This document shows positions 42,816 to 46,606 of a stretch of DNA of 64,000 bases, piece by piece. How positions within the stretch are numbered: the stretch's first letter is position 1; the number at the start of each line of letters is the position of its first letter. The position numbers and the translations under genes were made by a program. The notes under the pieces are model-generated. The model was given only the letters and a program-made list of their open reading frames with translations. It was not told where the DNA came from and searched no databases. The stretch comes from Guillardia theta CCMP2712. Lineage: Eukaryota; Protista; Cryptophyta. The DNA is taken from positions 343,657 through 407,656 of the forward strand of contig NW_005434593.1 in the NCBI RefSeq assembly GCF_000315625.1, written 5' to 3'.

Positions 42816-43625
42816 ATGCGAGGGCCAGCGGCGTTTGTCGTTGCCGTCGTGATGGCGACGGGAGCACGAGGAGGTGATGAGAGCTGAAGTGATGATAATG
42901 ATAAGACTCCTTGAACCTGCTCCTCATGCCTGACTGTGTTTGAGTGTTCTGTCTCTTGTCGCAAGGACTAGTTTAAGTTGTCTCTTTTTGTACCTGCTTG
43001 CCTCACTGCAGCTGTTCTGAGATGATCATGTCAAGCGCCATTACTTGTCAGCTCGTGTAAACTTGCTTCAGTTCACGGATTGAAGTGCTACCAGCCATCA
43101 AAGACTGTGGCTCTCCAAGACAAGATTAACCTTGATGCGCTAGCTGTACCGCCTTCTTGGCCGTCACTAGATACCTATCCCACAGGGTTGATAGAGCATG
43201 ATTGCAGTTCGCTGAAGGAAGAGCAGGATTGGGGCACAGGTGGCTTCTGTCTCAAGATTGTGATGCGCAACGCATCGATCCAGCGGGACGTTGCCACAGG
43301 TTCTTGCTATCGGTCGTTGCTGGTGGGTTACAGGTCGGATCAGATCGGTGGACTTTCTGACGCTGCTTGCAAGGTGTTGAGCGGAATTCAATGTGATTCC
43401 AACGGCAAGACCGGTCAGGCATATTCCATTCTCACCAATCAGACTTTCACTTACTACTGTTGCACCGGGAATATGTGAGACAGCAAGACTACACATGCTT
43501 CTTCTGACTCACTGATTGGAAGGTGCAACTCATCACCAAGACGTGCATTGGGTTCCTTCACGACTCTTGCAACATGTCTCCTTTCCTGCTTCTTGTTTGT
43601 ATCTAGAATGACTTCAATCTTATGA
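42816..43625 (+). CDS. Putative GPI-anchored three-finger/Ly6(quiver)-like protein
   Basis: Exons 42816-42873, 43072-43474 and 43523-43625 give MRGPAAFVVAVVMATGARGVHG|LKCY...C...FCLK...GSC...YYCCTGNMCN followed by SSPRRALGSFTTLATCLLSCFLFVSRMTSIL* (small residues then hydrophobic tail, GPI-signal-like). Confidence 0.78.
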
Positions 43626-43918
43626 GGATCTTTAATGAATAAATGTCTCCCCAACTTGCGATGTCAACACAGCCCTTACATCTCTGTTCTCCTCCAAGGA
43701 GCCTTCTCAACAAAAAAATTCCTATGCAGGACCTCCAGCAGTACAAGCGATCAGAGTGTGGGAGTGATCGGATAGATCAGAAGCACTGTGCAGCACGTCA
43801 TGCCGCAGGGGAGATCTTCAGCGCTGCTTTGATCGTTGGCATACTAACAAGATCGGGACAAGGACAAGGCTAGGGCTGCGCTTGTATGGGAACTGAAGCA
43901 GCAATGAGAGTGATAGCG

Positions 43919-46211
43919 TCATGCCATCATGCCACCATTGCCTCCCCATGCGACACCATGGGACTTCTGAAACCTGCATCGGAGGTGAGCCAGCGACAAG
44001 ATCAGAGGGCCATTGACCTGCTCCCCCCTGTGAGAGTTGTGTCCGGCAGCATGTATGGCCTTGCGAGAGAAGGTCCGAGGTCGTAAAGGATCCTTGCAAG
44101 ATCATCCCGCATGTCGCTTGCACTTGTGTACCTGACGCTGTGTCAGCAACAAACTCTGAACGAGGTCGCTCAACCGTCGGTCAATTTGCTTCTGTAAGGC
44201 CTTGTCCACCACCTAAACAGGCACCATCATCCTATAAAAGCAGCAAGACACTCTTGTCCTGAACCTGGGCGAAGGGCGGAGACATGTTAAAAACAATGCT
44301 TTTGAGGTCTGGAGCTTTCAACTTCAGGTCTCCGACCATCGTCTTTCCCCATGAGCCTCCTGACACCTTTGGACCACCGCTCAGTAACCGAAGCTCGTCA
44401 AGGAATTTCACCGAGAAAGGAAGCTGCCCAGAAGTCAACTTGAAAAGAGTGGCTCCAACACTCCACAGGTCACTAGACGGAGTCATGGCAACTTCGTTAT
44501 ACTAAGACCAAAAAATCAGAGAAACCCCGGTCAAATCCTACCACCGATGAGGTAGCGATACCTGTTCTGGAGGCATGTACCCATGTGTTCCAGCATACAT
44601 CATTGCGTCCTGCATTGCTACCAGCTCTCCGTACATGGGAAGGAACTCACTAAAGTCAATCTGACAATCCATGTTCCTGCATATTCACAAAATTTAGTGC
44701 CCATGGGAACAAGTTGTATCGTTCAATTCCTTACTTGTCGTATTTCTCCATGAGATTCTAAAAACAAAGAGGAATGGAAATTATCAGCATGGTCAAAGCA
44801 GTCGTCAGTTACAACCTTGAGGCGAGGAAGGGAGGGTTGTCGGTGCAGGATCTTGAAGCATTCTGAAATCTGTTCCAAGCCAATAGAGCTTTGCCCTTGA
44901 CTGATAGACAAGAAGACCTCTCGGAGTTTGTCCAGGTGCTCCTCAGCCCCGTTGACATACGTCAGAGCGACCAGCTCGCCATACATGGACCCGAATTCCT
45001 CATAGCCGATGCTCCCGTCCCCATCAATATCATATTTCTTTACAAGAGATTCGACTTGCCCACGGTCCGGTTGAAGCCCCAAGCTGTTCAGACAATCGTA
45101 CACAGAATCGAAGTCTAGAGAGCCTTTCCGGTCACGATCCAGCGATTCAAACACTTGCCGCAAGGCGGTTGATGTCCCTGACTCCGAGATCGAATTGTAC
45201 TCCGGGTCAAAGATGTAAGAGGGCAGTCCTATTCGGTCACTTCCCAGGACTCCAGTAGCAGTGCCAAAGTCTATCAACTTGTATATCCAACCTCCCTCGC
45301 CATCATCCACTCTGATGATGTTCTGCGGTTTGATGTCTCGGTGTATCAACCCAGAGCCATGCACATCTATGAGAGCATCCAACACGTTGATCCCGACCCT
45401 TCACATCGCAAGTTGTCAGAGGAGGGGGATTTCGCCAGCTTTCAAAAACCTGCAGGCCTCAGATACAGAGATAGGACCTCGCTCCACGATGATATCATGC
45501 ACAGACTTCCCCTTGAGGTGTTCGAGGATCAAGTACACCAGCCCTCCATTCTCTGCCTGCACATGCAGAAAGTGACTCAACGTGGGTATGAGTTCCAAAA
45601 CTTCAAGTCCTTACGATGCATCCGAAGTCAATTAGTCTCGCAATGTTCGGACAATTCAAGCGCTTCATCGCAAACCCCTCTCGTAATAGTAGAGACATCT
45701 CCCCCTCCTATCCTGTTTTGTCAGTTCTCTCAAAGTGATCTTTAACATATCAACACTTTCCTTCGGCCGCACAAGCTTGATCGCAACTTCTCGTGGCTTT
45801 TCATGCGGGTTGACATGCTCAGCAAGAAGGACAGTTCCGAACGATCCGCGACCGATCTCACGAACAAGGCTGTATCTTTCTCGTATTGGTCGAGGCAGAA
45901 GTTGCCAGAGCTTCATGCCGGATGGGATCTCAGTGAAGGAACTTGCCAGTCTGTAAAGGCAAGTCAAGGAATGAGAGGGATACAAGGACTTACATCCTAT
46001 GCTGCAAGCCCCTTGCCTTCTTACGGCATAACGAAATCCTTGGAGCTGAACAGAGAAATCCTGTTCCCTTGAATGGAACGGCCTGACATGATTGCTGAAC
46101 GCAGAAAGCTGGTGAGTTCACTACAGCGCTTGCACCAGTGAGCAGTGCCAGGAGCATCACTGTGAACGCCATCGAGAGGTCTTGGACGGCTGGTCTGATC
46201 ATGTCCAACAT
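43919..46211 (-). CDS. PknB-like Ser/Thr kinase with four EF-hand-like motifs inserted between DFG and PPE; N-terminal signal + transit-like peptide
   Basis: Motifs RYSLVREIGRGSFGTV, VAIK, HRDIKPQN, DFG (45271-45263), EF loops DIDGDGSIGYEE and DKNMDCQIDFSE, GTHGYMPPE (PPE at 44573-44565), SDLWSVG, RYTSASDMRDDL. N-terminus MAFTVMLLALLTGASAVVNSPAF. Confidence 0.88.
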
Positions 46212-46276
46212 CGGCGCTAGTCACTCAAGACATTTTATACCCCGTGATGCATTCCTGCTGAAATCTGAGTCAGAGC

Positions 46277-46606
46277 ATGGCTCGATCACACCTCAGACCC
46301 TCTCACGACTCCTCCCTGGCACCATTAGAATCCTACCTGACACGGTATCTCAGCTTCTCTCCTCTCCCCTCTCCTCCTCCCCTCTCCTCCTCCCCTCCCC
46401 TTCTCCACATGCTGCTCCTGATGCTCCTCAGGCTGTCCCCCCTTGCGACTCCTTCTCGCCTCCATCATCAATATGTGCTCTCCCCTTGCCTCTACCTCGA
46501 TAATCTTCTAGTAGACACAATAAGTAAATATGGGTATGTCCGTCGGTCGGACACCTTTATGGACACCCGGCGGATCCAGGGACCTTGCAAGGGGACAAGA
46601 AATGTG
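46277..46606 (+). CDS. Possible small spliced ORF (MARSHLRPSH...), unknown
   Basis: Two plausible GT-AG introns, the first with a TCC-rich tract and CTGAT branch. No motif recognised. Confidence 0.25.

What the first reader, a model, noticed from the sequence alone, without database searches (positions are those of the whole stretch)
44565..45271. Kinase with a whole calmodulin-like module inserted in its activation loop
Seen: about 190 residues lie between DFG (45271-45263) and GTHGYMPPE (PPE at 44573-44565), against the usual 20-30. They form two repeated EF-hand pairs (LRQVFESLDRDRKGSLDFDS...YDIDGDGSIGYEEFGSMYGELVAL and LREVFLSISQGQSSIGLEQ...YDKNMDCQIDFSEFLPMYGELVAM); loops 2 and 4 look canonical, 1 and 3 degenerate. 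Catalytic motifs (GRGSFG, VAIK, HRDIKPQN) are intact. Established: CDPKs and CCaMK carry their EF-hands C-terminal to the kinase domain. Inference: an independently evolved Ca2+-switched kinase in which Ca2+ binding directly repositions the activation segment.
Basis: partly seen in the sequence, partly recalled or inferred. Interest (0 to 1): 0.88.

Follow-up and report, generated by a model that had tools for sequence, protein, structure and literature searches.

The report
Kinase with calmodulin-like module in activation loop
A cryptophyte alga makes a protein kinase with a four-EF-hand, calmodulin-like calcium sensor built into its activation loop; the layout is real, transcribed and conserved, I found no description of it, but calcium control is still untested.

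Summary
A 12-exon gene on the minus strand (transcript 46259-43613, CDS 46211-43919) encodes a 575-aa protein identical to UniRef A0A7S4H8U4 of Guillardia theta, which is auto-named 'Calmodulin'. DFG (residues 246-248) and PPE (440-442) are 191 residues apart. The insert has four parts:
- a conserved post-DFG anchor;
- a disordered, variable linker;
- two EF-hand pairs;
- a helix that leaves EF4 and runs straight into the P+1 loop.

Spliced transcript contigs from three independent studies keep the whole insert. HRD, DFG and EF1-EF3 lie on one uninterrupted exon.

The architecture is conserved. The four-EF-hand form occurs in Guillardia and Hemiselmis virescens, as a fragment in Hanusia phi, and in about seven metagenomic clusters. 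A sister subfamily has a single inserted pair, and G. theta has a paralogue of this type (GUITHDRAFT_104043).

Across the family the calcium ligands of EF2 and EF4 are invariant, while EF1 and EF3 decay. AlphaFold gives a confident model (pLDDT 84, pTM 0.85). The excised module matches calmodulin and troponin C.

The kinase core is nearest to bacterial PknB/Stk1 kinases, not CDPKs. All full-length orthologues carry a signal-peptide plus transit-peptide-like leader.

I found no paper describing this layout. FAM69/DIPK, with one EF-hand in the N-lobe, is the closest precedent. Calcium switching is likely but was not tested. I class it as a new variant of a known kind.

The parts
43613..46259 (-). 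Whole transcript, 12 exons: 46259-45994, 45950-45761, 45707-45615, 45556-45450, 45398-44816, 44757-44735, 44676-44562, 44501-44412, 44366-44265, 44212-44175, 44131-44018, 43973-43613.
   Evidence: Spliced contigs of runs X1, X2 and X4, from three studies. Ten introns are GT-AG and one is GA-AG.
43919..46211 (-). Coding sequence of 575 codons plus stop. The product is identical to P0153 (UniRef A0A7S4H8U4_GUITH).
   Evidence: exact identity checked by script.
45917..46211 (-). N-terminal leader, residues 1-84. A hydrophobic signal-peptide-like core (MAFTVMLLALLTGASA) is followed by a basic, acid-poor, transit-peptide-like stretch. The leader contains intron 45993-45951.
   Evidence: Hydropathy and composition of the leader, and the same layout in orthologues P0221, P0220, P0209, P0219 and P0194. 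Targeting itself is inference.
45263..45874 (-). Kinase N-lobe and catalytic core up to DFG: GRGSFG 45853-45836, K131 45778-45776, HRDIKPQN 45343-45320, DFG 45271-45263.
   Evidence: Pfam Pkinase covers residues 99-264.
45215..45262 (-). Conserved post-DFG anchor TATGVLGSDRIGLPSY (residues 249-264).
   Evidence: Mean pairwise identity of 57% among orthologues. It forms short strands in the model.
45173..45214 (-). Variable, disordered linker (residues 265-278).
   Evidence: Mean identity of 14% and variable length among orthologues. pLDDT is below 50.
44960..45172 (-). EF-hand pair 1 (residues 279-349). The EF1 loop at 45139-45104 is degenerate. The EF2 loop at 45031-44996 is canonical.
   Evidence: Pfam EF-hand_7 at 280-342, E 9.6e-15. 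Calmodulin is the best match among solved structures. Loop comparison.
44610..44935 (-). EF-hand pair 2 (residues 358-427), split by introns 44815-44758 and 44734-44677 around a 23-nt exon. The EF3 loop at 44902-44867 is degenerate. The EF4 loop at 44739-44646 (which spans an intron) is near-canonical, with Gly6 replaced by Cys.
   Evidence: eight helices with high pLDDT. Orthologue P0018 gives two Pfam EF-hand_7 stretches.
44565..44645 (-). EF4 exit helix FLPMYGELVAMQDAMMY running into the P+1 loop GTHGYMPPE (residues 416-442).
   Evidence: Model helix 334-350 is followed directly by the P+1 loop. The sequence is conserved as M[YF]GELVA.QD...GT.GYM[SP]PEQ.
43919..44564 (-). Kinase C-lobe and C-terminal tail (residues 443-575), including the conserved tail motif HGVAW.
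   Evidence: Pfam Pkinase second stretch. PknB, Stk1 and StkP align across the whole C-lobe. Alignment A1.

Best explanation
This is an expressed, single-copy Guillardia theta gene for an active-looking Ser/Thr kinase. Its activation segment has been replaced by a calmodulin-like module of four EF-hands.

The segment runs in this order:
1. DFG.
2. A conserved 16-residue anchor.
3. A floppy linker.
4. EF1-EF2.
5. EF3-EF4.
6. The EF4 exit helix.
7. The P+1 loop and PPE.

The most likely mechanism has three steps. Calcium binds the conserved sites EF2 and EF4. This changes the shape of the two lobes. Because the EF4 exit helix is continuous with the P+1 loop, the change moves or orders the substrate-binding part of the activation segment, so calcium takes the place of activation-loop phosphorylation.

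Shown here: the architecture, its transcription, its conservation, the intact catalytic residues and the selective conservation of calcium ligands.

Inferred: calcium binding, calcium dependence of activity, the coupling route, and whether calcium activates or inhibits.

The kinase core looks PknB-like (bacterial type). A conserved leader of a signal peptide plus a transit-peptide-like stretch suggests that the protein works in the complex plastid or its surrounding compartments.
For: Gene model and expression:
- Spliced contigs of 1578, 1822 and 2083 nt from three studies carry 44816-45397 uninterrupted. They show all eleven introns.
- The resulting ORF equals P0153 exactly.

Domains:
- Pfam Pkinase comes in two stretches around EF-hand_7.
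- For P0074 the precomputed Pfam order is kinase, EF-hand, kinase.

Conservation:
- A search of 1.84 billion representative proteins found collinear relatives at 41-49% identity: P0003, P0007, P0008, P0018, P0074.
- A profile search found about ten clusters.
- Named taxa are Guillardia theta, Hemiselmis virescens and Hanusia phi.
- EF pairs are 42-43% identical among orthologues, against 59-61% for the kinase core and 14% for the linker.
- EF2 loop positions 1, 3, 5 and 12 are D/D/[DNS]/E in every member that has an EF2. EF4 positions are D/[DNS]/[DN]/E in every member aligned. EF1 and EF3 vary.

Structure:
- The full model has pLDDT 83.9 and pTM 0.85, and only the linker and the tail are disordered.
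- The module modelled alone has pLDDT 81.8 but pTM 0.57. This hints that the kinase core fixes the orientation of the lobes.
- The module matches calmodulin and troponin C over about 140 columns at probability 1.0.
Against: - No biochemical data exist.
- In G. theta itself EF1 and EF3 are degenerate and EF4 has Cys at the usually Gly position 6. At most two sites could bind calcium.
- I could not see model coordinates or the PAE map. The position of the module relative to the active site is therefore not known, and the pTM argument is indirect. The five models ranged from pLDDT 67 to 84.
- The alignment behind the model is shallow (18 sequences).
- The intended docking test did not run.
- Raw RNA reads were few: 7 reads from about 6% of run X19. 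Expression is therefore low, or not measured well.
Confidence: 0.6

Rival explanations
1. The EF module is a permanent structural or docking element, not a switch. It binds calcium constitutively or not at all. It serves to recruit substrates, to dimerise, or to hold the activation segment permanently in the active shape. The kinase is then calcium-independent.
For: - Half of the EF loops are degenerate in G. theta and in several orthologues.
- The two-EF-hand relative P0230 has lost recognisable loops altogether, and Pfam finds no EF-hand in it. The fold can therefore persist without calcium sites.
- The confident single-state model fits a rigid scaffold equally well.
Against: The ligand positions of EF2 and EF4 are invariant in every four-EF-hand orthologue, while the neighbouring loops drift. 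That pattern is what selection for calcium binding would produce, not selection for fold alone.
Confidence: 0.25
2. The module works by CDPK-style release of autoinhibition. Without calcium, the module or the conserved post-DFG segment (R-x-G-L-P-[SA]-F) blocks the substrate groove. With calcium, the EF lobes clamp an internal hydrophobic helix and move away from the groove.
For: - The post-DFG segment is conserved, and the residue at the possible phospho-acceptor place is Ala in many orthologues and Ser in others.
- Each EF pair is followed by a conserved amphipathic helix, M[YF]GELVAL.
- The N-terminal lobe hangs on a flexible linker.
Against: - No junction or autoinhibitory helix like that of CDPKs is present.
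- The global model is unlike CDPK structures, with TM 0.25-0.29.
- The pseudosubstrate reading is pattern-spotting only.
Confidence: 0.12
3. The architecture is an artefact: a gene-model fusion, a retained intron, or a minor isoform. The real mRNA would lack the EF region.
For: None found. Contigs can drop rare isoforms, and the X1 assembly breaks at intron 2.
Against: - HRD, DFG and EF1-EF3 lie on one exon with no stop. That exon is present whole in the spliced contigs of three studies.
- Both ends of the insert lie inside exons.
- Orthologues from other genera have the same layout, some as single ORFs on genomic contigs of up to 28 kb.
Confidence: 0.02

Closest known systems
CDPK (calcium-dependent protein kinase) and CCaMK
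   Same: A Ser/Thr kinase and a calmodulin-like or visinin-like EF-hand sensor on one polypeptide, so calcium can be read without free calmodulin.
   Different: - In CDPK and CCaMK the EF-hands follow the kinase domain, after an autoinhibitory junction. Here they sit between DFG and PPE, and nothing EF-like follows the kinase.
- Global fold similarity to CDPK structures is low, TM 0.25-0.29.
- CDPKs are absent from the best C-lobe matches.
FAM69/DIPK kinases (PMC3696010)
   Same: An EF-hand motif inserted inside a kinase domain, and predicted to give calcium control.
   Different: [quoted passage not shown] It is a Cys-rich atypical kinase of the metazoan secretory pathway. Here four EF-hands (about 150 residues) sit in the activation segment of a classical kinase.
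Bacterial PknB/Stk1/StkP Hanks-type kinases
   Same: - They are the best or joint-best matches to both halves of the core.
- They are the best structural match, with target TM-scores of 0.83-0.86 for the top three PknB chains.
- The NCBIfam model PknB_PASTA_kin scores 153.6 bits, above Pfam Pkinase at 131.6.
- They share the GT..YMSPEQ signature.
   Different: - There are no PASTA repeats and no transmembrane segment.
- The score is far below the family cut-off of 450 bits.
- The two activation-loop threonines of PknB have no counterpart here. This is from my own knowledge of PknB.
- N-lobe scores are no better than for CDPK and CaMK.
Kinases with large inserts between subdomains VII and VIII (Greatwall/MASTL, NDR/LATS, plant AGCVIII). 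From my own knowledge, not tested here.
   Same: They tolerate a long insertion at the same place in the activation segment.
   Different: Their inserts are mostly disordered or regulatory peptides. None is a folded calcium-sensor domain.
Engineered domain-insertion switches (for example a ligand- or light-sensing domain inserted in a kinase loop; calmodulin inserted in GCaMP). From my own knowledge.
   Same: A sensor domain inserted in a surface loop passes its conformational change to the host protein.
   Different: Those are man-made. This would be a natural example, conserved over a whole algal class.

Membership tests
Eukaryotic-type protein kinase (Pfam PF00069) | Gly-rich loop, beta-3 Lys, helix-C Glu, HRD..N catalytic loop, DFG, and APE-type motif with the P+1 loop. 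| tested here: met
   GRGSFG 106-111, VAIK (K131), REG helix-C Glu, HRDIKPQN 222-229, DFG 246-248 and GTHGYMPPE 434-442. Pkinase scores E 4e-38 in two stretches.
EF-hand / calmodulin-like four-EF-hand module | Helix-loop-helix units in pairs. The 12-residue loop has oxygen ligands at positions 1, 3, 5 and 12, and Gly at position 6. | tested here: met
   - Pfam EF-hand_7, EF-hand_1 and EF-hand_6 all score above their cut-offs.
- The model has eight helices.
- Foldseek's best matches are calmodulin and troponin C over about 140 columns.
- At loop level EF2 is fully canonical, EF4 lacks Gly6, and EF1 and EF3 are degenerate.
Calmodulin proper (the name UniRef gives this protein) | A free-standing protein of about 149 residues with four canonical EF-hands and very high sequence conservation. 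| tested here: not met
   The protein has 575 residues and a kinase domain. The module is only 19-27% identical to calmodulin and troponin C in the structural alignment. Two of the four loops are degenerate.
CDPK | Domain order: kinase domain, autoinhibitory junction, then a C-terminal calmodulin-like domain. | tested here: not met
   All the EF-hands lie between DFG and PPE. The residues after the kinase domain (about 549-575) hold no EF-hand.
CDPK | A CAMK-group kinase core. | tested here: inconclusive
   For the N-lobe, CDPK1 and CaMKI score about the same as Stk1 and StkP (68 against 69 bits). For the C-lobe, only PknB-type kinases align in full.
FAM69/DIPK | A single EF-hand between helix C and beta-4 of a Cys-rich atypical kinase. 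| tested here: not met
   The insert lies after DFG, not in the N-lobe. The N-lobe is uninterrupted in Pfam (residues 99-264). The family description comes from PMC3696010.
Stk1/PknB PASTA kinase (NCBIfam NF033483) | Kinase domain, transmembrane segment and extracellular PASTA repeats, with a score of at least 450 bits. | tested here: not met
   The score is 153.6 bits, from the kinase part only, and there are no PASTA repeats. The resemblance is limited to the catalytic core.
Cryptophyte plastid-targeted protein (bipartite leader) | A signal peptide followed by a transit peptide, with Phe at position +1 for import into the stroma. | tested here: inconclusive
   - Every full-length orthologue has a hydrophobic core followed by a basic, acid-poor stretch.
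- 'SA|F' occurs in P0221 and P0220 and in P0341, and 'SPA|F' is possible in G. theta.
- No signal- or transit-peptide predictor was available, and the cleavage sites are guesses.

The most novel reading that the evidence does not exclude
This would be a natural 'domain-insertion' calcium switch, in which a calmodulin-like module has replaced the phosphorylatable activation loop. Calcium would then gate the P+1 loop and substrate site of the kinase directly. The kinase core would be of bacterial (PknB-like) type, and the protein would be imported into the cryptophyte complex plastid as a plastid-resident calcium-decoding kinase. It would be a third, independent solution to calcium-regulated phosphorylation, alongside CaMK with calmodulin and CDPK/CCaMK.
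Probability: 0.3. Interest if true: 0.85.

Novelty: new variant of a known kind. Interest (0 to 1): 0.66.

Why it matters
Kinases that read calcium through their own EF-hands are textbook cases. In all the described ones I know of, the sensor is appended to the kinase and works by moving an autoinhibitory segment.

Here the sensor is the activation segment. If calcium controls it, this would be the most direct coupling between a second messenger and the catalytic machinery of a kinase that I know of. It would also be a natural counterpart of the domain-insertion switches that protein engineers build.

The family offers natural comparison material: two-EF-hand and four-EF-hand forms, and canonical and decayed loops, for studying how such a switch evolves.

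The conserved plastid-type leader raises a second possibility. Cryptophytes may decode calcium signals inside the complex plastid with a dedicated kinase of bacterial type.

On the practical side, the database name 'Calmodulin' for this protein and its paralogue is wrong.

Tried and rejected
**Complex prediction.** I submitted the kinase N-part, the kinase C-part, two calcium ions and the EF module as partner. The aim was to test whether the module docks on the core without the covalent tether. The tool did not fold the job, because of its rule on pairing eukaryote chains with possible microbe chains. This gives no evidence either way.

**Model coordinates and PAE.** Neither is exposed, so I could not read the position of the module relative to the active site.

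**ESM Atlas searches by features and by structure.** They returned only ordinary CDPK-type clusters and bacterial kinase domains. No cluster of 50 or more members shares the architecture. This is not evidence of absence for small families.

**Own-genome search with the large exon.** It found no second collinear copy. The two-EF-hand paralogue turned up only later, through P0074.

**High-scoring metagenomic kinases P0231-P0249.** They are probably not closer relatives. P0231 has two kinase domains in tandem, and the regex suggests the same for P0232-P0249, which would double their score.

**Origin of the kinase core.** I did not build a tree to test bacterial against eukaryotic origin, because no balanced sample of eukaryotic kinases could be fetched. 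That question stays open.

**Literature.** Seven full-text searches found no description of the family. Subscription journals are not covered.

**Raw RNA reads (X19).** Only 7 reads were laid. That is too few to show transcript ends or minor isoforms.

Full report
**1. What is in the sequence**

The minus strand between 46.3 and 43.6 kb carries a eukaryotic gene with short introns of 43-60 nt.

I laid public runs on 43600-46400. Three runs from three different studies (X1, X2, X4) each hold a spliced contig of 1578, 1822 or 2083 nt. Their joints define eleven introns. Ten are GT-AG, and intron 2 (45760-45708) can only be placed as GA-AG. The runs are only guessed to be RNA by their records. 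However, they hold about 0.6 of the sampled words, against 0.81-0.99 for the DNA runs, and they carry precise intron-sized deletions. They must therefore derive from spliced RNA.

The stretch 44816-45397 is present whole in all three contigs. This single exon encodes the end of helix E, HRD, DFG, the linker and EF1-EF3, so the EF region is part of the mature mRNA. Both borders of the insert lie inside exons: the N-terminal border in exon 5 and the C-terminal border in exon 7.

The assembled mRNA has one long ORF of 575 codons (46211-43919). It is letter for letter P0153, which is UniRef A0A7S4H8U4 of Guillardia theta, auto-named 'Calmodulin'. The genome size, 87.1 Mb in 669 contigs, fits that species as far as I remember.

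**2. Anatomy**

| Element | Residues |
|---|---|
| GRGSFG | 106-111 |
| VAIK (K131) | 128-131 |
| HRDIKPQN | 222-229 |
| DFG | 246-248 |
| PPE | 440-442 |

There are 191 residues between DFG and PPE.

Pfam splits Pkinase into two stretches around EF-hand_7 at 280-342. For the relative P0074, the precomputed Pfam order is kinase, EF-hand, kinase.

The insert has these parts:
- A conserved anchor, TATGVLGSDRIGLPSY (249-264).
- A variable linker (265-278).
- EF1-EF2 (279-349).
- A short inter-lobe turn.
- EF3-EF4 (358-427).
- The EF4 exit helix FLPMYGELVAMQDAMMY, which ends four residues before the GT of the P+1 loop.

Each pair ends in MYGELVA[LM], the sign of an internal duplication.

Loop chemistry:
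- EF2 (DIDGDGSIGYEE) is canonical.
- EF4 (DKNMDCQIDFSE) keeps all its ligands but has Cys at position 6. The Hanusia phi fragment P0250 has the same Cys.
- EF1 has Lys at position 5 and Ser at position 12.
- EF3 is unrecognisable as a binding loop.

**3. Conservation**

I searched 1.84 billion representative proteins with the HRD-to-EF3 exon. Among the best 150, the only proteins that also hold a kinase were collinear relatives at 41-49% identity (P0003, P0007, P0008, P0018, P0074) and fragments. The rest are multi-EF-hand proteins. A regex scan of all fetched sequences confirmed that only family members have EF loops between DFG and APE.

A family profile found about ten clusters and then a sharp drop from 590 to 324 bits. 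Named members are:
- Guillardia theta.
- Hemiselmis virescens, MMETSP1356.
- Hanusia phi.

The other members come from metagenomes and metatranscriptomes. Some sit as long ORFs on genomic contigs of up to 28 kb.

A sister subfamily has a single inserted EF pair: P0074/P0205, P0230 and P0340. It includes a G. theta paralogue, GUITHDRAFT_104043 (P0341), at G000:C15:505643-507920. In a small tree of the EF pairs, all first pairs form one clade with support 95/92. The second pairs and the single pairs fall on the other side. This fits a duplication inside the insert before the four-EF-hand species diverged. The sequences are short and several branches are long, so this is suggestive only.

Mean pairwise identity among seven non-redundant orthologues:

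| Region | Identity |
|---|---|
| Two kinase halves | 59% and 61% |
| Post-DFG anchor | 57% |
| Two EF pairs | 42% and 43% |
| Linker | 14% |

The calcium-ligand positions of EF2 and EF4 are invariant in every member that has them, while EF1 and EF3 drift. That contrast is the best available evidence that calcium binding, and not just the fold, is under selection.

**4. Structure**

AlphaFold2 on an 18-sequence family alignment gave mean pLDDT 83.9 and pTM 0.85 for residues 80-575. Only the linker and the C-terminal tail fell below pLDDT 50. The model shows eight helices for the four EF-hands. The last of them (model residues 334-350) leads straight into the P+1 loop.

The module folded alone reached pLDDT 81.8 but only pTM 0.57. 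A two-lobed sensor whose lobes are free to move would be expected to behave this way. The higher pTM of the whole protein hints that the kinase core fixes the lobes. I could not inspect the PAE or the coordinates, so this is soft evidence.

Foldseek matches the isolated module to calmodulin and troponin C over about 140 columns, at E about 1e-7 and probability 1.0. It matches the whole model to PknB kinase domains, with target TM-scores of 0.83-0.86 for the top three chains. CDPK structures reach only TM 0.25-0.29 overall. The ESM Atlas holds no cluster with the same overall shape.

**5. What kind of kinase**

- N-lobe plus catalytic loop: S. aureus Stk1 and StkP score about the same as CDPK1 and CaMKI, at 69 against 68-66 bits.
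- C-lobe: only PknB, Stk1 and StkP align over its whole length. Eukaryotic kinases match just the part from the P+1 loop to helix F, and CDPKs are not among the best 60.
- The NCBIfam model PknB_PASTA_kin scores 153.6 bits, above Pfam Pkinase at 131.6 but far below its own cut-off.
- The family consensus GTHGYMSPEQ is the usual bacterial Hanks-type signature. This is from my own knowledge.

I read the core as PknB-like, at about 60% confidence. I did not build a tree.

**6. Leader**

The ORF begins 84 codons before the kinase. A hydrophobic core (MAFTVMLLALLTGASA) is followed by a stretch with 8 Lys/Arg and a single acidic residue.

Every full-length orthologue has the same layout. 'SA|F' motifs occur in P0221, P0220 and the paralogue P0341, and 'SPA|F' is possible in G. 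theta. This is what a cryptophyte bipartite plastid-targeting signal looks like, as far as I know. No predictor was available, so targeting is inference. Two out-of-frame AUGs precede the start codon in the contig.

**7. Mechanism**

Shown: the layout, its transcription, its conservation, the intact catalytic residues and the selectively kept EF2 and EF4 ligands.

Inferred: calcium binds EF2 and EF4. The resulting opening of the lobes, above all the swing of the EF4 exit helix, is passed to the P+1 loop four residues away. This sets the substrate-binding part of the activation segment. The N-terminal lobe, held by a floppy linker, may dock or undock.

I put calcium-regulated activity at about 0.6, and this particular coupling route at about 0.4-0.5.

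Rivals are a constitutive scaffold (0.25), a CDPK-like release of a pseudosubstrate (0.12) and an artefact (0.02, rejected and by the orthologues).

**8. Compared with what is known**

CDPK and CCaMK share the idea of kinase and sensor on one chain, but not the topology. FAM69/DIPK is the only described case that my searches found of an EF-hand inside a kinase domain. It has one motif, in the N-lobe of an atypical kinase. Large inserts between subdomains VII and VIII are known in other kinases, but as far as I know none is a folded calcium sensor.

Seven full-text searches found no paper on this family or on the two accession numbers.

**9. Verdict**

I class it as a new variant of a known kind, with interest 0.66. 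The scan's own note s1-432981, on the same gene, called it bacterial-type and organelle-targeted. My tests agree in part.

Noticed in passing
window 45708-45760 (minus strand): Intron 2 of the kinase gene can only be placed as GA...AG. The same joint stands in the contigs of two studies (X2, X4), and the X1 assembly breaks exactly there. The spliced product restores the motif 'GEM' that the orthologues conserve.
   Followed up: partly
window 45917-46211 (minus strand): An 84-codon leader with a signal-peptide-like core and a basic, acid-poor stretch. The layout is conserved in all full-length orthologues, and 'SA|F' motifs occur in several. This suggests import into the cryptophyte complex plastid. 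Two out-of-frame upstream AUGs lie in the 5' end of the transcript contig.
   Followed up: partly
G000:C15:505643-507920 (loci L015, L016): A paralogue in the same genome (GUITHDRAFT_104043, P0341, 553 aa). It has a single EF-hand pair in the activation segment, its own leader with 'SAFTAP', and a coiled-coil stretch before the kinase. It represents a sister subfamily with two EF-hands.
   Followed up: partly
window 44735-44757 (minus strand): A 23-nt micro-exon (NLMEKYDK) between two 58-nt introns, inside EF-hand 4. It is confirmed by the spliced contigs of three runs.
   Followed up: yes
One is in frame (45 nt). If retained it would add 15 residues (VKFLDELRLLSGGPK) to the C-lobe. The other changes the C-terminal tail to one ending in the conserved motif HGVAW.
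   Followed up: yes
window 46347-46400: A purine-rich simple repeat (GGAGAGG-like) just upstream of the transcript start. The reads tool skipped it as a repeat.
   Followed up: no
P0153 and P0341 (database records): UniRef names both EF-insert kinases 'Calmodulin'. The name comes from the inserted module and misdescribes proteins of 575 and 553 residues that have a full kinase domain.
   Followed up: yes
P0231-P0249 (metagenomic proteins): P0231 carries two tandem PknB-like kinase domains, and a regex scan suggests the same for the 600-1050-aa proteins P0232-P0249. That would explain why they outrank single-domain kinases in the family profile search.
   Followed up: partly
P0001 (215 aa, ENA): An ORF 98% identical to the large exon. 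It reads on into the intron exactly as the window's ORF 44723-45385 does. So a second, slightly different Guillardia-like genome with the same exon-intron border exists in public assemblies.
   Followed up: no
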